Below, one piece after another: positions 7,355 to 54,877 of a stretch of DNA of 64,000 bases. Below the pieces are notes generated by a model. It worked only from the letters and a program-made list of their open reading frames with translations. It was not told the origin of the DNA and ran no database searches. This stretch comes from Thecamonas trahens ATCC 50062 (lineage: Eukaryota; Protista; Apusomonadida): NCBI RefSeq assembly GCF_000142905.1, contig NW_013657650.1, positions 268,420-332,419 of the forward strand, in the 5' to 3' direction. The position numbers and the translations under genes were made by a program. The stretch's first letter is position 1. The number at the start of each line of letters is the position of its first letter.

Positions 7355-7900
7355 TGACCTCGCAGACGAGACGGAAGCTGCTGCTGACGAGCCAAGTGTG
7401 ACTTGTGGGCCAGGGGGGGCCACGGCGCCCGTGTGACCTGAGGGCGAGATGGCCACCCCTGGCCGGCTCCGGGCCCACCACCCAGCCGGCACGCCGCCGC
7501 CAGTGGCAGCTGGCACCGCTTCTGCTGTCACTCTCTGACCGAACACTGGCCGAACACCGCCGCCACCCCGGCACGGCTGCCCTACCGTCTGCTGCTGGCT
7601 ATCCTCCCCTCCGGCATGTCCCATGCCCTCTGGCCTTGCTTCTGCCTTTCTCACTCCTACTGCCGGCCCCGCATCCCCTATTCCAGGCGTGTACAGCCGC
7701 TGCGCCCCACGGATTCCCCCGCTGTCGGCGTGGCACTGCTTCAGAAGAATCTTCCGCAACCGGTTTTTGCGCGCCAAACTGGCGGGCTCACGTCCCGGGC
7801 GGGCAGGCACCGCACTCGGCCTGCCACCTCTCCTCACATCCCTCATTTCCCACTCCCCGCGTGCCCCACATTGTCTGCCCCCGCTCGGTTGTTGTTGCTC

Positions 7901-9769
7901 ATGCGAAAGTCCCCCGTCGCTGGAGTTGCGCGCTCGCGGGTGGCCCTCTCGCCGCCGCCCTCGCCCTGCGCCGAGCCGGCGCCGCGCCAGTCGCCTGCCC
8001 GCTCACCGCCGCCGCCGCCAGCACTCGCTCCTGTTGACACGCCACCAGTTGCGCTGGTGCCCAAGCCGCAGCGTGCGCCGCGTCCAATGCCCGTGCCACC
8101 GCTGGGCGTGGTGGGGCAGCGCGGAACCCGGCTGCCCGGGAGACCCCGCCCGCGGCCGACTCGGACGGCGCGCGCGCTGCCCAAGCCGGATCCGGCCGGC
8201 TTTGATGCCTCTGCTGGCGCTGGCTCGGGACCCGGCTCGGTGACAGGCACGCCACGGCGGGCAACTGGGTCGTCATTTGGCGCTCGCTCGCGACCGCGGC
8301 CCGATCCGTCGGGCCTCGGCAACCCGTCGCTTGTCTCGCCGAACATGAGCTCGCCCTCGTTCTCACCGCGCATTCGCAAGCATCCGCACTCGGCGCCGCC
8401 GTCGTCCAAGGCCTGCCCGCCGTCCCCGCTTCGCAAGGTTTCGCCGTACGTCCGGCGGCGGCGCGACTCGTCCATCAAGGTCTACTACATGCGCCCGGCG
8501 CACCGACGGCCGCTCGCCTCGCCGCTGCCAATCGTTTCGCGACGGAAGGTATTTCCCGGCGAGCAGGCCGCGCACCCGCCGATGTCGTCGTCTTTGCGGT
8601 ATGAACTCGCGTCCACAGCGCCGTACTCGCTGCCGTCGTCGACAACGGCGTCGCCAAGCAGGAAGCGGGTGGCGCGAGCCTCGCTCGCGCGCCGCCACGA
8701 ACGGACGCAGTCGTCTGTCGAAGCCCGGTTGTACGCCTCGCTCTCTGGTGGCCTGCCGCCTGCGATGCCGTCGGCCACCAAGAGCGCGCTCGGCTTTCAT
8801 GCCGAGTTTGATTCGGTGGCAGTTGTCTCCAAAGGCAAGTTTACCGAGGTTCTCAGAGTCCATTCGGCGGCGATCGACAAGTTTTTCGTGGTCAAGAAGG
8901 AGATTGACGACGTCCACCTGCCGGGCCTCTCGCTCAAACACGAGGTCGAGGTCATTCGCAAGCTCGGTGTCCCGCCGCACAACCACGTGGTGCTCTACGA
9001 AAAGGCGTGGGAGGAGGCCGGCGTGATGCACATTCAGATGGAGGACTGCGCCCGCGGCTCGCTCGAGCACTACCTCGAGACACAGTTCAAGGACACGATG
9101 GCGCTCCCGCTCGAGTTTGTGCTCTCCACCCTTCATGACCTCGGCAAAGGGCTGGACTATACGGCGTCGCGCGGCGTCGTCCACCTTGATCTCAAGCCGG
9201 AGAACGTTTTTGTTGACGGCGATGGCAATCTCAAGCTCGGCGACTTTGGCATCTCGCACATCCTCCCGTCTGCGGGTGCTGACTCGGACTCATCGTCGGA
9301 CGACGACGACGACGGCACGGCGCCGCATCTGCGTCTGCTTCAGCCGTTCCGCCCGCCGGCGCTGGTGCGGTCGTCGTCGATGCTCGAGGACGGTGACCCC
9401 AAGTACATGTCACAAGAGCTCCTCAAGTCGGACTCGTCGTTGGTTGGCCCGTGGTGCGACGTCTTCTCACTCGGCATCATGTGCCTCTCTCTCCTTCTCG
9501 GCATTGACTTGCCGTCGCGAGGCGAAATGTGGCATGTGCTCCGCTCTGGCTCGCTCGGACCGGTCCTGGAGGTCTCTGAGGCCCACGGCCGGTATGTCGC
9601 GCTCGACGCGCCACAGGCGGAAGCTGCCACCTACAATGCTCTCCTCGACATTATTGGCCGCATGATGGCGCCCGATCCCAAGGACCGCCCAGAGGCTGCA
9701 GAAGTCGTTGTCGTAGCTGATGCGCTGCTCGAGCGCCTGCGGAGCGAGGCGACGGCCATGCAAGAATGA
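7901..9769 (+). CDS. Wee1/Myt1-family protein kinase
   Basis: GKFTEV, VVKK, HLDLKPENVF, KLGDFG, EDGDPKYMSQELL, DVFSLG, DLPSRGEMWHVLRSG; long S/P/R-rich N-terminus with many SP sites. Start uncertain (frame open from 7616). Confidence 0.85.
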   Translation: MRKSPVAGVARSRVALSPPPSPCAEPAPRQSPARSPPPPPALAPVDTPPVALVPKPQRAPRPMPVPPLGVVGQRGTRLPGRPRPRPTRTARALPKPDPAGFDASAGAGSGPGSVTGTPRRATGSSFGARSRPRPDPSGLGNPSLVSPNMSSPSFSPRIRKHPHSAPPSSKACPPSPLRKVSPYVRRRRDSSIKVYYMRPAHRRPLASPLPIVSRRKVFPGEQAAHPPMSSSLRYELASTAPYSLPSSTTASPSRKRVARASLARRHERTQSSVEARLYASLSGGLPPAMPSATKSALGFHAEFDSVAVVSKGKFTEVLRVHSAAIDKFFVVKKEIDDVHLPGLSLKHEVEVIRKLGVPPHNHVVLYEKAWEEAGVMHIQMEDCARGSLEHYLETQFKDTMALPLEFVLSTLHDLGKGLDYTASRGVVHLDLKPENVFVDGDGNLKLGDFGISHILPSAGADSDSSSDDDDDGTAPHLRLLQPFRPPALVRSSSMLEDGDPKYMSQELLKSDSSLVGPWCDVFSLGIMCLSLLLGIDLPSRGEMWHVLRSGSLGPVLEVSEAHGRYVALDAPQAEAATYNALLDIIGRMMAPDPKDRPEAAEVVVVADALLERLRSEATAMQE

Positions 9770-9891
9770 GACAAACTTGCACAACTTGCATAAAAAGAAG
9801 TGAACAAACCTCGGAACTTGAGAGAGCGACAAGAGGCAGAAGGAGAGAGCACAAAATCGTTGTTCATTTATCAGATGTGCCCACGCAAGCC

Positions 9892-12800
9892 TTAGGACGA
9901 GAGCGAGTACGGGACCTGCGACGGGCGCAGGAAGAGATACGGGTCCTCGGCGGCGGCGTTCCGGGCCAGGATGCTGGCCTCGATCTCCTTGCAGCGCTCC
10001 TGGAACGGCAGGTACGCCGGCTTGAACATATCGGCGACCGGAACTTGGAGGAGCGACGAGTACGAGCCGCCGGGGCCGAGAGTCGGGGTGGAGAGGAGGC
10101 GGACGAGGCCGAGCGAGTGGGTGACGGTGCGGGCGTCGGGAAGCGAGTCCATGATGTAGCGGAGGGTGACCTCGCTCTTGTTGATGGGCATCGGCTTGCG
10201 CATGAGGGTCGGGCGCGACGGGGCAAAAGCGTAGTAGTCGTACTGCGAGAGCGAGACTGCAGCGTGCTGGGCAGTGACGGTGAAGAGAAAGCGGGTGAGG
10301 AAGCGAGCGAGCTCGGGGCGGGTCTTCACATCCGGAATGGACGTGATGTTAGCACCGTGCGGCGAGCGGAGCTCGGCCATAAAGCCGTTGAACTGGTCAT
10401 CGGCGACAAGGTCGGCGTCGGATGCGTACATGATGTCGACGGCGCGGTTGGCGTAGTTCTCGATGGCGTCCCAGAGGACAAAGCCGTCGTCGCGGTAGTA
10501 GTAGCCCGGCAGCGGGTCGTCGGGCGAGCCCGGGGTAACCTTGGTGAAGCCGCGATCGGCGAGCTCCTGCGGAAAGGCAAAGCCCTCCCAGGTCCAGTAG
10601 TCGTTGTAGTTGCGCTCCATGAGCTCGAGGACGCCGTCGAGACCAATCGAGTTGAGGTTCTCGAACTGGGCGCCCTTGCGAGCGACAAGCGAGTAGCGAC
10701 CCATGTTGTTGACGGCAAAAGTGTCGTAGGTGTGCGGCTTGAGGAAGACGTACATGGGATGGTCCTTGGCAAAGGAGCGGAAGAAGGCGATGAGGAACGG
10801 CTCCATGGTGAGGTGGATGGGCCCGAGGTGGGCGCCGGCCTCGTGCCATTGGACGTCGGACGACGCGACGTGCATCTTGGCAAAGAGCCACGACTCGGCC
10901 GGGTCTGACGGGAGGTGCCAGACATGCGGGCCGGCCTCTGCGGCGCGGGTGCCGCGGGTGAGCTGGATGGCGAGCGGCATGAGCTTGGCGTAAGAGCCAG
11001 GCGCCACGTTGACGGTGTCGAGGTAGAAGACAACGACGGGTGCGTACATGATAAAGTCATCCTTGGTGATGGCGTCAGCGAGGAGCTCGTAGTCGGCAAA
11101 GTAGAGCTGGCCGGCCTCGCTCAGCTCGTCCATGGGCGGAAGACCCTTTGAGGCGAGGAAGGCGTTGGCGGCGGCAACCGAGGAGGGAGCCATGTCGAGG
11201 GCAGCAGGCAGCGGGTTGGTCGGGAGCACGCGCTGGAGAATGACCGGGTTGGTGCCAGTCAGGTACGTCCGCGCCCACACCATGTCATCGGTCCAATTGT
11301 GGTAGCCGTACGGGATGGGAAGGGTGAAGAGGTTGGCGTGAAGAGCCTCGACGGACGAGTTGGTGTCACCGGCGTCAAAGACGACGGCCCACTCGTCGGG
11401 CGACTCCCACTCGGAGATGGGCCGCGGCGCGTCCTTGACGCGGAGGAGCGACTTGGCGAGAGCGCCGGCAAAGACGGCACCGTGCGACGAATAGAACTTA
11501 AACTCGTACTGCTGCGACTGCGGGATGTCGCGAATGAAGCGCGGGAGGTAAGAGAAGGGGACGGGCATGGTGGCGTAGTCGAAGATGTCGGGCTGGCCAG
11601 CGAGCTGGCCGACGCGGCGGCCGGAGAAGGTCTCGGTACACGTCGGCTGCGCGACGACAGCCGAGTTAAGAGTGCGGCGGAGGGTGGCGGTGGCGTTGTA
11701 CACGAACTTGCGCGCCTTGGCGATCGAGCCGAGCGGGCGGTGCGAGACCGGCGTGTGCCAGATGTTGAACGAGAGGTCGCGGCAAAAGTCAAACTGATCG
11801 ACGTAGTCAAAGGTCTGCTGCGGGATGGTGAGGCGGGCAACAGGAACGTACACGACGTCGTTGTAGCCGGTCTTGTCGGTCCAGCGGACGGCGATGTCCT
11901 CGAGCGGGTTCTTGCAAGCGTCAAGACCCTGCTCCGCAATGCCAAACTCAAAGCAGGCCTCGCCGGCGTCGAGCCAGCGGGTCATGGCCTCGCGGAGAAA
12001 GTCGGGCGAGGAGCCCCAGGCGATCTCGTCGTCGGCGACGGCGGCCGAGTTGACGGCGCACGGGCGCACGCCGTACTTGACGGCGAGCGGGAGGTCGTAG
12101 AGCGAGTCGACCGGCGGCGCTGAGCCCAGGGCGTACGGCGTGACCGAAAAGTACTCGGTGGTGAGCGGATTCGACATGACAAAGCCCGAGTAGAACATGG
12201 GGCCGAGCTGGAAACGGAAAAGTCCCACTCGGCCGGGTTGAACGAGTTAAAGGTGTGGGTGAAGACGGTGAAGAGGGTGCGGAGGCCGCCAGCAACGATG
12301 GCCTTGAGCAGCTTGGGGTAGGCCGAGATCGAGTTGGCGAAGAAGGTCTTGGAGGAGACAAGGACAAAGTCTGCTGTGTTCGGCTCGGCAAACGGCTCAA
12401 AGGTGGCGGCCTTCTCGCCGGCGACGCCGCAGAGCTTGATGGCCATGCCGCGGACGTCGGGGCGGGCGTCGTTGCGGACCTTACGCATGCCGTTGGAGAA
12501 GCGGACCCAGGCCGGCCATGACTCGCCGGGGTTGGCAAAGAGGCCGACCTTGAGGTGCTCGGGAACCCAGTCGTTGACGCGGAACTCGCCACGGACGCAG
12601 CCGTGCATCTTGCGGTGGACGTCGCGGTAGGCGGTGTTGAGGTCAAGCTCCTTGACAATCGATGTCGTCGTGTCGATGAGCTCGGCAATGGACTGGGCCT
12701 CGTTGGCCTCCGGGTACACCTCGCCGGGCACGAGCGAGCACTGGTCAGTGTAGCGGGTGAGGGCGTGGAGGAAGAGGAGTGCAGCCGGGATGAGGATGAG

Positions 12801-14090
12801 GAGGCGGAGCCACGACTTGAGAGCGCGGGCCTTGTAGACGGCCATGGCGGCCCAGATGGTGCCGCCGCCGACAGCGACCTTGAAGGTCAGGGCGACGAGC
12901 TTGAAGACGTTGTTGGAGACAAAGAGCTCTGAAAAGAGCTCGACCTCCCAGGGAACAAGGCCCCAGTGGGTAAAGGCGGCAAAGACGAGAGCCACCGCGC
13001 CGGCCGCGAGGGCGGCGGTCTGGAGCCAGTGGTCGAGAATCCACTTGCCGAGAACCTCGGGGTGCGGGGCGTTGCCGTACGGCGCAAGGTAGAGGATGGC
13101 GAGGAGGAAGCCGAGGACGGCGAGCGCCTCGACCTGGGTGAGGTTGAGGGCAAACCAGGCAGTGGTAGCCGTGGAGAAGGCAGCCGCGGTGGCAGCGATG
13201 CGCCCGAGGGCGGCGGTGGCCGAGAACGAGACCTGCTGCGAGGCGTGGGCCGAGACGTAAGCGTCGGATGACGAACGCTTGACAATGTCAGCAGTGATAA
13301 AGACCATGGCGAGGCCAATCGCCGAGTGCTGGTAGGCAAAGACGACGTGGATGGCGTAGAGCGCAGTGGAGTGGGTGGAGAGCGGGAGCTCGACGTCGAG
13401 GAGGACGGTGAGGGCCAGAATCTTGACCAGGATGACGTTGTAGAGGACGTGCAGCTGGAGCGGGTTGAGGAGGAGGCGGAAGTGCAGCGGGTAGGTGATG
13501 CACGTCGCCGGCGAGACCGTCCAGTAGTACATGCGGATGGCCCAGATGAGGTAGCAGACGGTGGCAAACGAGACCGCGATCTGCGATGCCCACCAGCGCG
13601 CCCACATGCCGGGCTGCTTGCCCTCGGCCGCCAGCTTGCGGAAGAGGGTGAGCGCACGGCCAAGGCCAGCTGCCGGCGCCGCCAGAGTCAGGCCGGCCAG
13701 CAGCGCAATCTCGCCTGGGTTGTCCTTGTGGACGTCGAAGCGGACGGCGTAGACGAGGACGACGACGGCGGCCACAATGGCGACCGGGATGTAGGCGTCG
13801 ACCCAGGAGAAGCGGAGAGTGACAAAGGCGTCGGTAGCGTCAGCCACAAGCGAGTTGGTGGCGTCAGCGTAGTGCAGAATGGACCACAGGAGCCAGAACG
13901 GGAGAAGGTAGAGCCCAGCGCCGGCGCCCTGGTAGACCCAGTTGGACCAGCCACGGCTGCGCGAGACAACCACAAAGAGCGGACCAAAGTAGAGGAGGGC
14001 AAACGAAGCAACAACAGTAGCAAGGGCAAACGGCGAGCATCCCACGAGGAGCCGCGTAGCGGTGTACACCCCATGCAGGAGATCCACCAT
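9892..14090 (-). CDS. Fusion: multi-pass membrane domain + catalase-related (AOS-like) heme domain + lipoxygenase; one apparent frameshift at ~12218-12221
   Basis: ORF 11982-14279 has many TM segments, then RDVHRKMHGCVRGEF, VRFSNG, PDVRGMAIKL. ORF 9892-12228 has HRPLGSIAKARKFVY, then LOX motifs GTNP, WLFAK, HEAGAHLGPIHLTMEPF, HPMYVFLKPH, YYYRDDG, AQHAAVS. Adding one base to the A4 run joins them (..EWDFFRFQLG..), ~1399 aa. Confidence 0.85.
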
Positions 14091-14329
14091 AGTACTTGTA
14101 GTGGAGGGGGGAGAGAGAGAGGGGTAAGGGTGTTGGGTGTAGGGGGGAGGGGGGGAAGGGGGGGGGGGGCGGGGGAAGACGGCGATGTTTTGGCGCTCCC
14201 ACACGCGTGGGCTTTCTTCTTTATTTTTTTGGCGCCAAGGCCAGCGCAATGCGTTGTTGGTGTGGCTCTGCGAGTGCATTCATTCCATCATTACCATCAG
14301 GTACGGGTGTAGGAGGGCGGAGGGTTTAG

Positions 14330-15937
14330 TTAGTGTGCAAAGAACATCTTGACTGCGCGCACAATGTTGGCCCGACACATAGGGCACTCATCGAGCGAGT
14401 CGGCACACTCGCTGCAGGCGCAGACGTGACCGCATTCGAGGAGGATGACGTCGATGCGGTTGTCCATGCAGACAACGCAGAGGTTGGCATCCTCGTCGGC
14501 AGCGATTGGAGCAGGCATCTTGGCCGCGGCTTTGGCAGGGGCGGGAATCGACGGCGCGGGTGCTTGGGCGGTCGGTGCGATTGACGGCGAGCCGAGCGGG
14601 CGGCCGTCAGGGCGCACATCGACAAAGGACGCAGGCGGGACGGTGAGCGGCGGAAGTGAGGCGGGGTTCGGCAGCGGCGCCATAAATGACGGAGTCGGCG
14701 CGACGTGCGGTGGGGTGATGCGACCGGACGGAACGGGCGCGGCTGGCGATCCGCCGTCCGACTCGTCCGAGGCGCGCAGGATGGCAGAGGCAAACGAGGT
14801 ACGGAGAGAGGCAACGGGCGAGGCGATCGGCGAGGCAACATGCGGTAAGACTGGCTCACAGACGCTCCTGGTGGGCGTGGTGTGAAGGCCTGCAGCAGTT
14901 AGCCCGGAACCAAAAGAAGCCTCGGTTCGCTCCAACGTCATCAGGGACTGCGAGAGCACGCCGGCCTCCGTCTTGGATGACAGGAACTCGGCCAGCGACT
15001 GGTATCGGTGGCCGTCATACAGTAAAAAGCCCGAGGCCAGACACGAGAGCCGCGAGTGTGTGATGGTGCCGTTCGAGTTGGCGAGCGAGATGGTGTAGTC
15101 GCCCGGGACCGATGACGAGTAGCGGACAACATACGTCCCGGCGGCATGATGCGCGAGCCGAGCCTCGATCTCTTCGCGAGTAGCGCTTCCATCGAAACAT
15201 GACGACGACTCGACCGACTGGCGTACCATCTTGTACCGCGAAACGTCGTCGGGCGCCGTGGCGGACGCTTGCGTTTGCGAGTGTGCCGGTGACTCGGGCG
15301 CGTCCAGGCCATGCGCAGTGTACAGCAAGGCGCCCGCGCCGGCGGTCCCGGCCTGTTCGGCAGCCTCAAGCTCCAGAAGCGAGACAGTGTAGACGTGCGG
15401 CCAGAGAGCAACAATGTCCTCAATCGACGAGAAGCCGCGCGGCGAGGCCTTGTCGATGCAGATGCGGACCGAGCCATCGGGCTCGCGATGGAGCAGATAC
15501 AGGACGTGGATGAAGCACTCGAGGCATCCACATACGACAGCGCTAGCCCACCGTTCTGCCGCGACAACCGCCATATAAAGGTGCCCGGCGAGCGGCCCGC
15601 CAGCCGGCCCGGCACTACCTCGCCGTCCGAGGTGACAAAGCCCTCGAGGCCGACCCTATCTGCGCCTGGGTCAAACATGCCCGACGCCTCCAGCGCCGCC
15701 AGGAACTCGGGCGTAGCTATCCAACACCATGCCCATGCCCATACCACACGTGAGTTTCTCCCTCTTCTCCCTCCTCCCCCCCTTCTCCTCCTCTTCCTTC
15801 CAAAACGTACGGTCCGTCGGACAGAAAGGCACTCCGCCCCCGCCTGCAGCAGCAGTCTGTCCCGAGCAGGCAGAGATGGGCGTGTACTCGCACGGCTGCC
15901 TGTCTCTGCCATCCTCCCGGTACCGTTCCGCCGCCAT
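14330..15937 (-). CDS. Tandem SH2 + Pro-rich + C-terminal RING protein; probable intron 15717-15810 and frameshift at ~15510-15530
   Basis: SH2-1: RLAGRSPGTFIWRLSRQNGGLALSYV / FIHVL..FSSIEDIV. SH2-2: TREEIEARL....GTYVVRYSSSVPGDYTIS. RING: CVVCMD..LECGHVCAC..C...CPMCR. Intron GTACGT..ACTCAC..TAG is phase-compatible with ATG 15937. Confidence 0.7.
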
Positions 15938-50365: not shown

Positions 50366-53300
50366 CTACCCGTCGCTCTCGTCGAGATCGACGACCTGGC
50401 CAGGCTTGGACATGTCGATAAACTTGGACATCTCAAAATCAGCGCCGAAGCGCTGGCGAAGGCGGGCCTCGGCCTCCTTGAGCTCGAGGTTCTGCAGCTC
50501 GATCTCGTCGACGTCGTCAAACTCGTCAAACTCGTCGTAGAGGTCGAGGTCGTTGGCGGAGATGTAGTCCTGAACGACGCGCTGGGCAAAGGTGTGCGAC
50601 CAGAGAGAAACGCAGTCGACCGAGTGGGCGCGAGTGAAGATGCCGTGGCCGCGACGGCAGGAAAAGTAGACCTGGTCGTCGACTGAGCCGTTGTTGTGGC
50701 CGTGCGGCTCGTCGAGCTCGACACCGATCCAGTTGCCGGCCTCAAAGTGAGTCGGCCCGATGTAGCGGACGCGGCCAAGGTGGCCCTCCCAGTCGACCAT
50801 GTCGCCAAAGCCGAGCGGCTTGTCAAACTCGGCGTCGTTGAAGAGGTCTGAGCGCTGAGCCGGGTCGCGGGAGAGGACATGGACCATGTCGGCGCGGACA
50901 AAGAGGCCGTGGCCCTGGGTGCACTCAAAGAAGCGCTCGCCCATGCACCAGCCGGAAGAGCCGGGGGTGTCGCCGACGACGACGTCGGCCTCGATGCCGA
51001 GCCACTCGCCCGAGGCGTAGAACGGGAGCGGACCAACGTACTTGACGGTGGCCTTGATGTCGCCAAACTTGACGCGGATGCCGGTGAGGGCGGCGGTGGG
51101 CGCCTTTGCGAGTGCCTCTGCAGCCGCGTTCTCGGCCTCGAGCACGGCCTTCTCCTCGGCCTCGAGCTGCTCGAGGTCCTCGAGCTCCTTGCGCTTCATC
51201 TGCTCCTCAAACTCGCGCTGCTCGGCCTCGATCTTCTCGACCTTTTCGCGCTCAACGCGCTTGAGACGCGCGGCCTGGCGGCGCTCCTCGGCGCGCTCGC
51301 GCTTGTGCATGATCTGCGAGCGGCGGGCCTCCTTCTTGGCATCGACTTCGGCCTGGAGCTCGGCCATCTTGCGCTCGAGCTCGAGGCGGCGGGCGGCCTC
51401 CTCCTCCTCGAGCTTGCGCTGGCGGGCGCGGGCGGCCTCCTCTTTCTTGCGGCGCTTGGCCTCGGCCTTTTCCCGGGCAACGCGGCGGCGTTCTTCCTCC
51501 TCGAGGCGCTTCTTCTCCTTGACCCAGTCAGTGACGCGCTTGGCGCGGTCGATCTTCTCCTGCGAGAGGGTGGCGAGGTTTGCGGCGATGGCAGCGGCGA
51601 GGATGTCAGCCTTGTCCTTGACCACGTCTGCGAGAGAGAGATCGTAGTCGTCGAGCGAGGGCTTGAGCGAGGCAAACTCGGCGTGCAGGGCGCGGGTGGC
51701 CTCCTCCATTTCCATCTCGGCCTGCTCGAGCTCGTGGATGCGGCCGCGCATGTTGGCAAGCTGATCGGCGGACCAGCCGGGCTCGCGGGTGTCATCGAGG
51801 AGCTCGGAGATGCGGGCCTTGACGGTCTCGACGGGCTCGGCAGCGACCTTGACGATCGAATCGGCCTTGCCACAGACCTTGGCCTTGAGGTCGAGGTGCT
51901 TCTTCTCCTCGGCGACGCGACGCTCCTCCTCCATCTCGGCCTGGATCTCGTCGGCAGACTTGCCGGTGGCTTGCATGCGGCGGAGCTTCTCCTCGTTCCA
52001 CAGGCGGACGTTCTCGTACTTTTCCTCGAGCTTGGGAATGGCCTGGACCATGAGGGTGGTTCGGTAGAGCGACTGGACGAGGAGCGCGGCGCGCTGCTTC
52101 ATCTTGAGAATCTCCTTGAGGCGGGCCTCGCGGGCGGCCTCTAGCTGGCCAAAGGCATAGTCCTTGAGAAAGATCATGGTGGTGCCCATGCGGTAGGGGA
52201 CACCATTGTTGGCGACCATCTCATCGTCGGCGTCGATGAACTTGTCGCAGAGGTAGACGGCCTGGGCCTCAAAGTCCATGCCGGCAAGCTCGTCGAGTGG
52301 GACGCAAATCTTGTAGCGCTCGACAAAGTCGCGCGGGCGGTTCTTGCGCGGATAGCCCATCTTGCGGATCTTGATGGTCTCGAGCATGCCGGCGCAGCGG
52401 AGCTGCTCGAGCGTCATGTCGTCCTCGAAAAACTTGGGCTTCTTCCGGCCGTTCGGCTTGATGGTCCGCACAAACAGCGCATCAGTGGCGGTGAGCTTAC
52501 CGATGAGCTCCTGCAGCGAGGACTGGAAGCGGCGGGCAACGGTCGGGTTGCGGTCGTCCGACTGCGGGGCGTAGTCAAGGATGGAGGCAATGAGCGGATT
52601 TGCACTCTTCTTGATGAGCTGGATGAGGTCGTCGGAGAGCTTGTCCTTGTTCTTGGCAAGCCAGTCCTGCGGGGCGTCGGGATCGTCCGATCCGATGGTG
52701 TACTGGACGGGGCCGGCGTAGTGGTGGAGGATGATGTCGGTCATGTCGGTCTTCCACTTGTCTTGCTTGGTGATCTTGTCGAGGTACTCGGAGCGATTCT
52801 CCCGAAAGTCGTAGTCCTTGTTGGGGTTGGGTTCCCAGTTTGCGCCCGAGCAGTGGGCCTGGAGTAGGCGGTCGCGGAACTGCTGCCAGGTTGTCGGCGG
52901 GCGCGGCTTGGAGCAGTCGTTCATGATGTCGATGATGCCGTCCTTCTCCTGAACGAGGGCAATGCAGAGGTCGTTGTTCTGGAAGCGGATGTCGTCGAGC
53001 GGGATGTTCTCGGCCTGGTAGATGGCCTTTTCCTGCTCAAAGATGTTGATGTTGAAAAAGTTTTGCAGCATCTCGTTGGCAAAGTTGATGCAAAACTGCT
53101 CAAAGTGGTTGTTGGGCAGCATGACCTTGGGCGCCTTGGGCGGGAGCGGGCGCGGCTTGTTGGTAAAGTGCTCAAAGCCAAAGATGTCGAGCACGCCGAT
53201 AAAGGCCGCGGGCTCCTCATCCGAGGCGATGGTCTCGTTGATGTGGGCGACGATCCAGTCAAACATGGCCGAGTACACGGCCTTGGCGAGCGCGTTGCGA

Positions 53301-54877
53301 TTGTTGATGGCGTCCTTGTAGTTGAAGAACGAGGTCGTCGCATTGCCGCCCATCATCAGCACCCGCTCGCGGAGCGCCTTGTCGAGGTCGTCCGGGTCGA
53401 TTTCGAGGCAATGCGAGGCGCCGGCGATGGCCTCGGGCGTGGTCACAGTCACTGAGTCCTCACCCTCAAACTGGACGTTGCCGATGTGGAGGACGGCGGC
53501 GCAGATCTTCCAGATAGTCTCCTGCGTCTCGGCGTCAAAGTTGAGCGTAGTCATGTGCTTCATGGTGATCTGGAAGACCTCGGCGTCGTCCATGATCTTC
53601 TTCATAAATGTCACGCCCGACTGGGCCAGGTAAAAGTAATCCTCGGGCACGGCGCTCAGCTTCCACTTGGCCATCCGCTCGTCCTCGGTGGTGCCGGCAA
53701 AGAGCTGGTAAAAGCAGTGGTAGTTGCGTTCTTCCTTGGACTGGGTCACCACGCGCGACTTTTCGAGCAGGTAGTGCTTGATCGATGCGCCCATGATCAT
53801 GCCCTCGTCGTCAAAGAGGACCTCGACAAACTTGCCGAACCGTGACGAGTTATGGTTGCGCATGGTCTTGGCGTTGCCAAACGTTTCGAGCATCTCGCCC
53901 GACGCCAGGATCTGGTTCTGCACCTCGGACTCGCGCCCGGTCACAAACGTAAGGTACTCGAGAATGTGGCCGGTCGTACGGTTTTGCCAGCGCCAGACTC
54001 ACCCGAGATGACCACAGACTGGTTGATGTGCTTGCCCTCGGCGCACCCGTCGCGGAGGTTGGCCACCATCGAGTTATACACGTGGTCCGCCGACGCAAAC
54101 GGGTGCGGCGGCATCGATGGGTCCAAGTCCTTGCCCTTGTACGCCTTCTTCTGCTGGAGCGTGGTGTACCCGAGGTCGCGGTACGGGTTGATGGCCACCA
54201 GAATGGTGCCCACAAAGGTGTAGATGAGATCGGCCTTGAACCGCATGCGCAGGTTGTGCAGCAGCGCGCCCTCGTGCAGATCCGACAGCTCAATCATGTT
54301 CTCCACGCCACTCACGCAGTTCTCCGCCATCTTCACCGCCTTGTACTTTGACGAGTCTGAGCAGACAACCTCCGTAACCTTGTGGCTCTCACCCGCAGGC
54401 GGGTCACCCAGCGCCAACCGAATCTTGACCTCGTCGTCGGTCACCACAGCGCATTCTCCTCCGAGGTACACCTCCTTGGAGTGCGGGTCCCGTGGCACGA
54501 CCCACACCCACTCACCCTGTATGTCTCCACCACAACCACCGTACGTACATGGCGCGTGTGAGTGTACATGGTGGGTCCGTGGGGGCAAAATTTGCCTCAA
54601 ACTCTCGTTGCCTCGCCCCTCCAACGGCAATGATGGTTGAGCTTCAATTGGGGGTGGGGAATAATCGTTGTGGCATTGATTAATGTTGTGTTGTTCAGGG
54701 GGGTTGCCATTGGCGATCGATCAACCTGGCGGAAGGGGGAGGAGGGGAGGGGGGGGGGGGGGGGGGGGACGGGTAGGCAGTATGGAAGGGGGGGAGGGGG
54801 AAAGGGGGGAAGGTGATGGGTGTGTGGGGGTAGAGCGTGGTGGGGGTGCGTACCTTGGAGAAGTCTCCAAAGGGCAT
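50366..54877 (-). CDS. Unconventional myosin: motor, IQ, coiled-coil/SAH, two CAP-Gly domains; intron 54517-54853; frameshift ~53977
   Basis: SGESGAGKT, LETFGNAKTMRNHNSSRFGKF, LDIFGFE, FEQFCINFANE, HYAG.V.Y, FVRTIKPN; tail has ATVKYVG..WLGIE..FFEC..GHGLFVR and GRVRYIG..WIGVELDEPHGHNNGSV...YFSC..GHGIF. Confidence 0.9.

What the first reader, a model, noticed from the sequence alone, without database searches (positions are those of the whole stretch)
9892..14090. Candidate membrane-embedded oxylipin synthase: polytopic TM domain + catalase-related heme domain + lipoxygenase in one chain
Seen: ~440 aa with roughly 10-12 hydrophobic helices (14090 to ~12750), a catalase-fold heme domain (~12700-11670; distal His at 12615-12617, proximal Tyr in RKFVY at 11698-11700) and a full LOX catalytic domain (~11560-9892). 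The heme domain is split between two ORFs that join with one added base at the A4 run 12218-12221, so the fusion does not depend on guessing a linker. Established: catalase-related AOS/HPL-LOX fusions occur in corals (Plexaura AOS-8R-LOX) and cyanobacteria as soluble proteins, the heme domain converting the LOX hydroperoxide. Inference: this protist version adds an integral membrane domain, which I do not know from any described fusion. It would place both catalytic steps at a membrane, with the TM part as anchor, substrate conduit or sensor.
Basis: partly seen in the sequence, partly recalled or inferred. Interest (0 to 1): 0.9.

Follow-up and report, generated by a model that had tools for sequence, protein, structure and literature searches.

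The report
Membrane-anchored heme–lipoxygenase fusion enzyme
One intact gene of the marine flagellate Thecamonas trahens encodes a lipoxygenase fused to a catalase-like heme domain and, unusually, to a twelve-helix membrane domain; the apparent break is an assembly error, and the same three-part design occurs in a choanoflagellate and an amoeba, although none of the papers I searched describes it.

Summary
On the minus strand, 14090..9892 encodes about 12 hydrophobic helices, then a catalase-fold heme domain (distal His 12615-12617, proximal Tyr 11698-11700), then a lipoxygenase (LOX) with no PLAT domain.

- **Frame break:** it is an assembly error. With it the ORF is 1399 aa with no stop.
- **Public record:** the organism is Thecamonas trahens. 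XP_013756774.1 ("arachidonate 12-lipoxygenase", 1379 aa) is this gene. It bridges the missing base with a false 59-nt intron (12208-12266) that removes 20 conserved residues.
- **Distribution:** the same TM + heme + LOX design occurs in transcripts of Savillea parva and Luapelamoeba hula and in two environmental sequences. No paper I searched describes it.
- **Heme domain:** it belongs to a clade nearer Mycobacterium MAP_2744c than coral allene oxide synthase. It has Val-His, not the Thr-His typical of fatty-acid-hydroperoxide enzymes, so its chemistry is open.
- **Topology:** cysteine pattern, charges and signal-peptide-bearing relatives suggest the catalytic domains face outside the cytoplasm.

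This is a new variant of a known kind.

The parts
9892..14090 (-). Whole coding sequence. It is 1399 aa plus stop once the base missing from the assembly is counted. Start is at ATG 14090, as in the public model. An in-frame ATG at 14279 would add 63 Pro-rich, basic residues and is not excluded.
   Evidence: ORFs. The corrected translation has no internal stop. It is 99-100% identical to XP_013756774.1 outside the false intron.
12753..14090 (-). N-terminal polytopic membrane region, aa 1-446, with about 12 hydrophobic helices. It matches no known family.
   Evidence: Hydropathy and loop charges. AF2 models it as helices throughout but at pLDDT 38.7. No Pfam hit, no Atlas hit and no paralog in the genome. 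Only aa 246-443 align weakly with Savillea P0022 (z 6.8).
11662..12752 (-). Catalase-related heme domain, aa 447-810. Distal Val-His has H492 at 12615-12617. Proximal R794 is at 11710-11712 and Y798 at 11698-11700. Ser stands at the catalase distal-Asn position. Six cysteines are conserved among the eukaryotic fusions.
   Evidence: Alignment A2 and its profile search of the PDB. Motif positions. Cysteine analysis.
12212..12214 (.). A3 run where the assembly lacks one A. This causes the apparent frameshift between the two ORFs.
   Evidence: read-laying table 4 reports 'put in behind 12211: A' in contig 22 of X2 (spans 11962-13491) and contig 26 of X6 (spans 12036-12448). Spacing relative to homologs is 23 versus 24 residues.
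12208..12266 (-). False 59-nt GT..AG intron in the public gene model. It deletes 20 residues of the heme domain, including the conserved FNSxNPxxW motif.
   Evidence: Removing 12208-12266 from the window sequence reproduces P0003 (XP_013756774.1) exactly. The motif is conserved in homologs. No joints appear in any run.
11512..11661 (-). Linker with no predicted structure, aa about 811-860, between the heme and LOX domains. There is no PLAT/C2-like beta-sandwich.
   Evidence: In the AF2 model of ORF2, residues 183-233 are coil with pLDDT under 50, followed by helices only. No PLAT Pfam hit in this protein or its homologs.
9895..11511 (-). Lipoxygenase, aa about 861-1399: a helical N-terminal extension plus the catalytic domain. 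The iron ligands are H1083 and H1088 (WHEAGAH, 10848-10828), H1276 with Ser in place of Asn (AQHAAVS, 10272-10252), and a C-terminal Ser in place of Ile. The Coffa site is Gly (NNMGRY, 10710-10693).
   Evidence: Pfam match. PDB alignments. AF2 gives pLDDT 70-95 over the core. Foldseek top hit is CspLOX2 5med, TM-score 0.80 normalised to the target. Coordinates.

Best explanation
This is one intact, single-exon gene of Thecamonas trahens. It encodes a 1399-aa integral-membrane, two-catalyst lipid oxidase. The frameshift in the window is a one-base assembly error.

An N-terminal bundle of about 12 poorly conserved helices holds two catalytic domains at a membrane. The first is a catalase-fold heme domain of the MAP_2744c-like clade. 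The second is a PLAT-less, predicted R-type lipoxygenase.

Inferred mechanism: the LOX domain oxygenates a polyunsaturated fatty acid to a hydroperoxide. The adjacent heme domain then converts or reduces that hydroperoxide. The built-in membrane domain replaces the Ca2+/PLAT membrane targeting of the coral fusion.

The catalytic domains most likely face the non-cytoplasmic side, meaning the lumen of the secretory or endocytic system or the cell surface.

Shown: gene integrity, domain order, conservation of the heme and iron ligands, and recurrence of the architecture. Inferred: the coupling of the two reactions, the product type and the topology.
For: **Integrity**
- An extra A in contigs from two independent runs of the organism restores the frame.
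- The corrected ORF has no stop in 4.2 kb.
- Four differences in an estuary-metagenome strain are three synonymous changes and one Asp-to-Glu change.
- A metatranscriptome holds three identical contigs, lying over the TM part and the linker region.

**Architecture**
- Pfam LOX E 1.7e-54.
- Heme-domain profile against 3e4w, catalases and 1u5u.
- The distal His and the proximal Arg and Tyr are present.
- 12 hydrophobic segments.
- No PLAT domain.

**Recurrence**
- Savillea parva P0022 (1352 aa), Luapelamoeba hula P0064/P0153, environmental P0150 (on a 4.9-kb contig almost filled by the gene) and P0005 all carry TM + Catalase + LOX.

**Coupling**
- This heme clade is fused again and again to lipid-active partners: LOX, patatin, RoxA-like cytochrome c and DyP.
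- Catalase-LOX fusions of corals and cyanobacteria are known to work in two steps (PMC5617202, PMC11719350).

**Topology**
- The loop before the last helix has 3 Lys/Arg and no acidic residue. The segment after it is acidic.
- The soluble relative P0001 has an N-terminal signal-like helix that aligns with this last helix.
- The Thecamonas paralog in L002 also has a signal-like N-terminus.
- Cys at C678, C713 and C770 is present in 28-33 of 35 small homologs with a signal-like N-terminus, against 7-13 of 38 without one (Fisher p about 1e-7). All eukaryotic fusions have these plus two more conserved Cys.
Against: - No activity, product or localisation data exist.
- The heme domain has Val-His, not Thr-His. 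The title of Mashhadi et al. 2016 (ref. [quoted passage not shown] Only 1 of about 130 fetched relatives has Thr at that position.
- Two of the five LOX iron-ligand positions are atypical: Ser for Asn, and C-terminal Ser for Ile. Homologs keep Asn and Ile. The LOX domain may therefore be weakened or altered.
- The number of helices is uncertain, because three segments are only weakly hydrophobic. The loop between helices 4 and 5 carries 4 positive charges, which conflicts with a simple 12-helix model with the C-terminus outside.
- The cysteine/signal-peptide correlation ignores phylogenetic relatedness and uses a crude signal detector.
- Read support for the extra A is shallow, at contig depths 3.67 and 2. 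X2 may be the data set the assembly came from.
- No RNA run of the cultured organism was laid on the gene.
Confidence: 0.6

Rival explanations
1. The heme domain is a catalase or peroxidase partner rather than an AOS/HPL-type isomerase. It would reduce lipid hydroperoxides to alcohols, or remove H2O2, so the protein would be a membrane lipid-peroxide handling enzyme and not a synthase of special oxylipins.
For: It has Val-His as true catalases do. The closest solved relative is 3e4w (MAP_2744c), which from my own knowledge was reported as a peroxidase toward organic hydroperoxides. From memory, the coral AOS T66V mutant gains catalase activity (Tosha et al.). I saw only a truncated title of that paper in the reference list of PMC5617202 and did not read it.
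Against: Ser replaces the catalase distal Asn, a position that varies (S/T/N) across the clade. Stable fusion to a LOX in at least five lineages argues that the substrate is the LOX product. A peroxidase needs a reductant, and nothing here suggests one.
Confidence: 0.3
2. The architecture is the same, but the heme and LOX domains face the cytosol. The TM bundle would simply tether them to the ER or plasma membrane, where phospholipase-released PUFA appears.
For: All well-studied animal and plant LOXs act in the cytosol (my own knowledge). If the upstream ATG at 14279 is used, the basic N-terminal tail would sit in the cytosol, and an even number of helices would put the C-terminus there too. 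About half of the small homologs lack a signal sequence.
Against: The charge bias at the last helix, signal-like N-termini in P0001 and the L002 paralog, and the exported-type cysteine set.
Confidence: 0.3
3. The TM region has a function of its own, such as lipid or fatty-acid conduit, scramblase or sensor, rather than acting as an anchor.
For: Twelve helices are far more than anchoring needs. A polytopic region is kept in all five relatives. The last four or five helices are weakly conserved and collinear.
Against: No charged or polar residue inside a helix is invariant. The only invariant residue in that part is a loop Trp. The N-terminal 250 aa or so do not align at all between lineages. 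There is no Pfam, Atlas or paralog match. P0005 gets by with about 3-5 helices.
Confidence: 0.15
4. It is a pseudogene. The single-base deletion is real in the genome, and only truncated TM + half-heme and half-heme + LOX products could be made.
For: The assembly shows A3, and the public annotation had to invent an intron. Read depth at the site is low.
Against: Two runs made ten years apart show the extra A. There is no other stop or frameshift in 4.2 kb. Variation in the environmental strain is mostly synonymous. The assembly also differs from all three DNA data sets at 10555, so it contains local errors.
Confidence: 0.04
5. A real short intron bridges the two frames, as in the public model, so the protein is 1379 aa.
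For: The 59-nt stretch 12208-12266 has GT..AG ends and restores the frame in the assembly.
Against: The stretch encodes the motif FNSxNPxxW, which is conserved in homologs and collinear with them. With the true 60-nt length it is in frame and need not be removed. No run shows a joint.
Confidence: 0.03

Closest known systems
Coral allene oxide synthase-8R-lipoxygenase fusion (Plexaura homomalla; PDB 3dy5, 1u5u, 2fnq) and the Capnella cHPL-LOX fusion
   Same: An N-terminal catalase-fold heme domain is followed by a C-terminal LOX in one chain. The LOX has Gly at the Coffa site, as in the 8R-LOX. LOX sequence match is E about 1e-53. The fusion serves to bring both catalysts to a membrane (Gilbert et al. 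2008, title only, cited as ref. 32 in PMC5617202).
   Different: The coral protein is soluble and, from my own knowledge, binds membranes through a Ca2+-dependent PLAT/C2-like domain. Here there is no PLAT, and about 12 TM helices are built in. The heme domains are only distantly related (profile E 6.8e-7 against 2.8e-17 for 3e4w). From my own knowledge the coral enzyme has Thr-His; this one has Val-His.
Cyanobacterial catalase-LOX fusions (Anabaena PCC 7120, Acaryochloris marina)
   Same: A catalase-related domain is fused to a PLAT-less 'mini' R-LOX, and hydroperoxide transformation is two-step (PMC11719350, sections 5.2 and 6.1.3).
   Different: As far as I know they are described without a polytopic membrane domain. 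No sequence of theirs was compared here, so the degree of kinship is untested.
MAP_2744c, the 33-kDa catalase-related protein of Mycobacterium avium ssp. paratuberculosis (PDB 3e4w)
   Same: It is the closest solved relative of the heme domain (profile E 2.8e-17, aligned over positions 92-350 of 363).
   Different: It is a stand-alone small protein with no LOX and no membrane domain. The alignment shows no Cys triad in it.
Cyanothece sp. lipoxygenase 2 (CspLOX2, PDB 5med)
   Same: It is the best structural match of the LOX model (E 1.5e-23, TM-score 0.80 on the target). It too has a helical N-terminal extension instead of PLAT.
   Different: It is a stand-alone soluble LOX, with canonical Asn and C-terminal Ile ligands from my own knowledge.
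Uncharacterised eukaryotic relatives: Savillea parva EP00038_P002296, Luapelamoeba hula EP01087_P006965/6, environmental P0150 and P0005, and the signal-peptide form P0001
   Same: Domain order is the same and identity over heme + LOX is 30-36%. The six heme-domain cysteines are conserved.
   Different: These relatives keep Asn and a C-terminal Ile (Leu in P0001) in the LOX domain. Thecamonas has Ser at both positions. Their TM regions differ in length (about 3 to 10 or more helices) and hardly align.

Membership tests
Lipoxygenase (PF00305) | Sequence match above the curated threshold | tested here: met
   185.9 bits against a cutoff of 23.6, E 1.7e-54. PDB 5-LOX E 2.9e-56.
Lipoxygenase (PF00305) | Three His iron ligands (HxxxxH and a third His) | tested here: met
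   WHEAGAH and AQHAAV align to the His ligands of 5-LOX and 8R-LOX.
Lipoxygenase (PF00305) | Fourth side-chain ligand Asn or His, four residues after the third His | tested here: not met
   Ser stands there (HAAVS) where 5-LOX, 8R-LOX and all five homologs have Asn. From my own knowledge, Ser also occurs in human 15-LOX-2, so it need not abolish activity.
Lipoxygenase (PF00305) | C-terminal Ile (or Val) whose carboxylate binds the iron | tested here: not met
   The protein ends ..YSLSS. The length matches ..GSIAI of the homologs, but the last residue is Ser. Contigs of X1 and X6 agree with the window over the last codons from 9800, and X2 from 9904. The carboxylate itself is still available.
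Animal/plant-type LOX and the coral AOS-LOX fusion | N-terminal PLAT/C2-like beta-sandwich before the catalytic domain | tested here: not met
   No PF01477 hit. The AF2 model shows coil and then helices before the core. The best fold match is the PLAT-less CspLOX2.
Catalase-fold hemoproteins | Sequence or profile similarity to the catalase core | tested here: met
   A single sequence falls below the Pfam cutoff (20.6 against 25 bits). The subfamily profile hits 75 PDB chains, all catalases or catalase-related.
Catalase-fold hemoproteins | Distal His, and proximal Tyr with its Arg partner (RxxxY) | tested here: met
   H492 in RDVHRK aligns to the catalase distal His. R794 and Y798 in RKFVY align to the nearly invariant R and Y of the family.
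Catalase-fold hemoproteins | Distal Asn (the NxPxFF motif of true catalases) | tested here: not met
   The window has SSKTFF, with Ser at the Asn position. The clade varies here between N, S and T.
Fatty-acid-hydroperoxide-metabolising catalase-related enzymes (cAOS, cHPL and relatives) | Thr immediately before the distal His. I know this hallmark from the title of Mashhadi, Newcomer and Brash 2016, cited as ref. 158 in PMC10813956; the paper itself could not be read. | tested here: not met
   The window has Val-His. Among fetched relatives the residue is A 61, V 29, Q 26 and T 1. The other fusions have L, Q, V, V and Q.
Fatty-acid-hydroperoxide-metabolising catalase-related enzymes (cAOS, cHPL and relatives) | Conversion of the partner LOX's hydroperoxide to an allene oxide, aldehyde or epoxide | not testable with these tools
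   This needs expression and product analysis.
Integral membrane protein | Several hydrophobic helices of TM length, encoded in the same ORF as the catalytic domains | tested here: met
   12 segments have a 19-residue Kyte-Doolittle mean of 1.25-2.29. The ORF is continuous. Homologs show the same. Membrane insertion itself was not tested.

The most novel reading that the evidence does not exclude
This would be the first family of integral-membrane lipoxygenases. A lumen- or surface-facing two-step lipid oxidase would be shared by bacterivorous protists on both sides of the animal-amoeba split (apusomonad, choanoflagellate, amoebozoan). Its heme partner would come from a non-Thr-His catalase clade and carry out a hydroperoxide transformation not yet described. 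The enzyme might act on outer-leaflet or phagosomal (prey) lipids rather than on cytosolic free fatty acids.
Probability: 0.3. Interest if true: 0.75.

Novelty: new variant of a known kind. Interest (0 to 1): 0.6.

Why it matters
Every lipoxygenase studied so far is, to my knowledge, a soluble or peripherally bound enzyme. How it finds membrane-derived substrate and hands its unstable hydroperoxide to the next enzyme are central questions in oxylipin biology. In this protein a polytopic membrane domain, a heme domain and a LOX are hard-wired together, and the design is kept in three distant protist lineages close to the origin of animals.

- It gives a natural system to test substrate channelling at a membrane.
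- It lets us ask whether oxylipin synthesis can take place outside the cytosol.
- It offers a way to find the chemistry of a large, uncharacterised clade of catalase-related proteins that is fused again and again to lipid enzymes.

There is also a practical point. The public protein record for this gene lacks 20 conserved residues of the heme domain because of a one-base assembly error.

Tried and rejected
- **Structure of the TM region.** An AF2 model of the TM region plus half the heme domain, from a 5-sequence alignment, reached only pLDDT 38.7. It was unusable, so no fold search was run on it.
- **ESM Atlas.** No usable hit for the TM region. For the whole public protein it gave only a cnidarian LOX/PLAT cluster at 0.76.
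- **Word-index protein searches.** Three searches returned almost nothing beyond the query. This says nothing about absence. The index-free search found the relatives.
- **Pairwise phmmer on isolated TM regions.** Nothing significant. Only shuffle-tested Smith-Waterman scores showed weak kinship (z 6.8, 4.6, 3.6, 3.4).
- **Tree.** A maximum-likelihood tree of heme + LOX for 9 proteins was star-like (support 67/51, long branches). It cannot say whether the TM-bearing forms share one origin.
- **TM region of the catalase-patatin fusions (P0048, P0102).** No relation to this TM region.
- **Small-intron explanation.** Rejected.
Rejected in favour of the A3 run.
- **X1 estuary metagenome.** It has a hole over 11730-12272 and cannot speak to the site.
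- **Papers.** Two papers I wanted (PMC5267355, PMC2755933) are not held.
- **Handling of the corrected protein.** The corrected full-length protein was built only inside local scripts, for alignment and counting. It was never sent to a search or fold tool. Those tools received the two pieces, or public protein ids.


Full report
**What is in the sequence.** Two long minus-strand ORFs cover the finding: 14279..11982 (765 aa) and 12228..9892 (778 aa). They overlap in different frames. The first carries a long hydrophobic region and a weak Pfam Catalase match (E 2.6e-4, below the cutoff). The second carries a strong Lipoxygenase match (E 1.7e-54). Hydropathy finds 12 hydrophobic segments between aa 24 and 445, counted from the ATG at 14090. 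The LOX part matches solved 5-LOX (E 2.9e-56), coral 8R-LOX and Cyanothece LOX2.

**The frame break is an assembly error, at a slightly different place.** The relative P0001 (1003 aa) aligns collinearly across the break. Its residues 6-170 match the first frame and residues 214-897 the second. The gap is 43 residues in P0001 and about 44.7 codons in the window, which leaves no room for an intron.

I laid the contigs of four public runs on 9800-14300. Two runs of the organism itself each have a contig that bridges the site and carries one extra A behind 12211. These are X2 from 2010 (record 22, 11962-13491) and X6 from 2020 (record 26, 12036-12448). The extra A therefore falls in the A3 run 12212-12214.

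With that base the gene is one ORF of 1399 aa with no stop, reading ..NPAEWDFSVFQLGPMFY... The spacing between two conserved motifs is then 23 residues, against 24 in the homologs.

Further points from the same runs:
- The assembly differs from all three DNA data sets at 10555. The change is synonymous, so local assembly errors exist.
- The estuary-metagenome strain X1 differs at four sites: three synonymous and one Asp-to-Glu.
- X1 does not cover the site.
- Depths are low (3.67 and 2), and X2 may be the assembly's own source. Deep accurate reads are still desirable.
- A metatranscriptome (X14) holds three identical contigs, two over the TM part and one over the heme-LOX linker region. This hints at expression but does not prove it.

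**Identity and the public record.** An index-free HMMER search with the TM + N-terminal heme piece found a 1379-aa protein at 99% identity. It is KNC50819.1 / XP_013756774.1, named 'arachidonate 12-lipoxygenase', from Thecamonas trahens ATCC 50062. Removing 12208-12266 (59 nt, GT..AG) from the window reproduces that protein exactly. The annotation therefore bridged the missing base with an invented intron. The removed 20 residues include the motif FNSxNPxxW, which is conserved in all homologs. The record is thus short by 20 real residues. A search of the 28.7-Mb genome found no other LOX. It found one other catalase-related gene (L002) and no paralog of the TM region.

**The architecture recurs.** The same search returned four more proteins with a polytopic N-terminus, a Catalase-type domain and a LOX:
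- Savillea parva (choanoflagellate), 1352 aa.
- Luapelamoeba hula (Amoebozoa), 1430 and 1502 aa.
- Environmental P0150, 1560 aa.
- Environmental P0005, 1141 aa.

The two named ones are single Trinity transcripts. P0150 almost fills a 4.9-kb contig. This argues strongly against the TM part being a separate gene or transcript. P0001 sits on a eukaryote-like 102-kb contig that also carries a linker histone, kinases and a RING protein. It has only a signal-like helix before the heme domain, and that helix aligns with the last TM helix of the Thecamonas protein. These counts are lower bounds, because only the best 150 of 2115 hits were listed.

**The membrane region.**
- It has no Pfam, Atlas or paralog match.
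- Its AF2 model is all-helical but unreliable.
- With the heme domain cut away, only weak, collinear similarity remains over the last 200 residues or so. The scores are Thecamonas-Savillea z 6.8, Luapelamoeba-P0005 z 4.6, Savillea-Luapelamoeba z 3.6 and Luapelamoeba-P0150 z 3.4.
- No charged residue within a helix is invariant.

I read this as a conserved core of four or five helices next to the heme domain, plus a free-evolving extension. That fits an anchor or scaffold better than a transporter or sensor. A function of its own is not excluded.

**The heme domain.** Both window pieces align along the full length of a family of proteins of about 350 aa, at 37-39% identity to P0007. The family profile hits MAP_2744c (3e4w, E 2.8e-17), true catalases (about 1e-11) and coral AOS (1u5u, 6.8e-7).

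Ser stands at the catalase distal-Asn position, a site that varies in this clade. The residue before the distal His is Val. Among fetched relatives it is A 61, V 29, Q 26 and T 1.

The enzymes known to transform fatty acid hydroperoxides are said to be marked by Thr-His. I know this only from the title of Mashhadi et al. 2016, cited in PMC10813956, because the paper could not be read. This domain is therefore not a member of the cAOS/cHPL group by that criterion, and its chemistry is open.

The same clade is fused elsewhere to LOX without a TM region (P0094), to patatin plus 8-9 helices (P0048, P0102), to RoxA-like cytochrome c (P0131, P0132) and to a DyP peroxidase (P0091). This supports a role with lipid peroxides in general.

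**The LOX domain.** The AF2 model of the second ORF (pLDDT 65.7, and 70-95 over the core) shows a stretch of about 50 residues with no predicted structure after the heme domain. Helices follow, and there is no beta-sandwich. The best fold match is the PLAT-less Cyanothece LOX2 (TM-score 0.80 on the target).

The three His ligands are present. The Asn ligand is Ser, and the C-terminal residue is Ser rather than Ile. The homologs keep Asn and Ile. The Coffa position aligns with the Gly of coral 8R-LOX and the Ala of 5-LOX. By the Coffa-Brash rule (my own knowledge) this predicts R-stereochemistry, as in the known catalase-LOX fusions (PMC11719350).

**Which side of the membrane.** Four observations point to the non-cytoplasmic side.
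1. The loop before the last helix has three Lys/Arg and no acidic residue. The segment after the helix is acidic.
2. P0001 and the Thecamonas paralog in L002 carry signal-like N-termini.
3. In 73 small homologs, Cys at the positions of C678, C713 and C770 occurs in 28-33 of the 35 with a signal-like N-terminus, against 7-13 of the 38 without one (Fisher p about 1e-7).
4. All eukaryotic fusions have these cysteines plus two further conserved ones.

This suggests disulfides and an exported domain. There are caveats:
- The relatedness of the sequences inflates the test.
- The signal detector is crude.
- The helix count is uncertain.
- The loop between helices 4 and 5 is strongly positive.
- A start at 14279 would add a basic tail.

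I put the exoplasmic orientation at roughly 60-65%.

**Comparison with what is known.** Catalase-related heme-LOX fusions are established in soft corals and cyanobacteria (PMC5617202, PMC5793058, PMC10813956, PMC11719350). The coral literature stresses that the fusion lets the PLAT domain carry both catalysts to the membrane (Gilbert et al. 2008, title only, cited in PMC5617202). The protist proteins solve the same problem differently, with no PLAT and a built-in polytopic domain.

Full-text searches found nothing on the following topics:
- Thecamonas together with lipoxygenase.
- Catalase-related LOX fusions with transmembrane domains.
- Protist AOS-LOX fusions.

The one LOX survey that tabulated TM helices found none (PMC5712309). 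The protein is public and machine-named, but its architecture appears undescribed.

**Verdict.** The three-part single chain is real and conserved. 'Oxylipin synthase' is a reasonable inference from the fusion, but the heme active site does not carry the signature that would support it, and the TM domain looks more like an anchor than a conduit. I rate it a new variant of a known kind, interest 0.6.

Noticed in passing
L002:1444-2766 (-) = G000:C51, about 50547-53978: Thecamonas has a second, stand-alone catalase-related gene. From an internal Met it shows a signal-like N-terminus (MHNIALAFVALFALALASAVAA..) followed by the same heme-domain motifs (HGC, RFSNG, RPC, FC..MSFNPW). It is probably secreted.
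   Followed up: partly
window 12208-12266; public record XP_013756774.1 / KNC50819.1: The public gene model contains a false 59-nt intron that compensates for a one-base assembly deletion. The deposited protein lacks 20 conserved residues of the heme domain.
   Followed up: yes
window 10555: The assembly has A where contigs of all three DNA data sets (X1, X2, X6) have G. The change is synonymous (GAT to GAC, Asp) and is probably another assembly error.
   Followed up: yes
P0048 (1403 aa) and P0102 (1701 aa), environmental (Logan): These show another undescribed fusion of the same heme clade: an N-terminal catalase-related domain, then a patatin-like phospholipase, then 8-9 TM helices. Their TM region is unrelated to the Thecamonas one.
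   Followed up: partly
P0131, P0132 (949-991 aa) and P0091 (940 aa): The same catalase-related clade is also fused to RoxA-like and other cytochrome c domains, and to a DyP-type peroxidase. The heme domain appears to be a widely reused module.
   Followed up: no
window 14142-14175: A C-rich tract on the sense strand (G-rich on +) lies just upstream of the start codon. It attracts tens of thousands of depth units of unrelated metagenome and metatranscriptome contigs. It is low-complexity sequence and no evidence of expression. In frame it would encode PPPPSPPPP if the ATG at 14279 were used.
   Followed up: partly
window 7616-9769 (+) and 14330-15574 (-): The neighbours are a protein-kinase gene convergent with the LOX gene, with only 122 nt between the stop codons, and an SH2 + RING gene upstream on the same strand. 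There is no obvious functional link to the LOX gene.
   Followed up: no
P0152 (647 aa), Luapelamoeba hula isoform i1: A shorter Trinity isoform of the Luapelamoeba gene encodes the 10-helix TM region and ends early in the heme domain. It is either an incomplete transcript or an alternative product.
   Followed up: no
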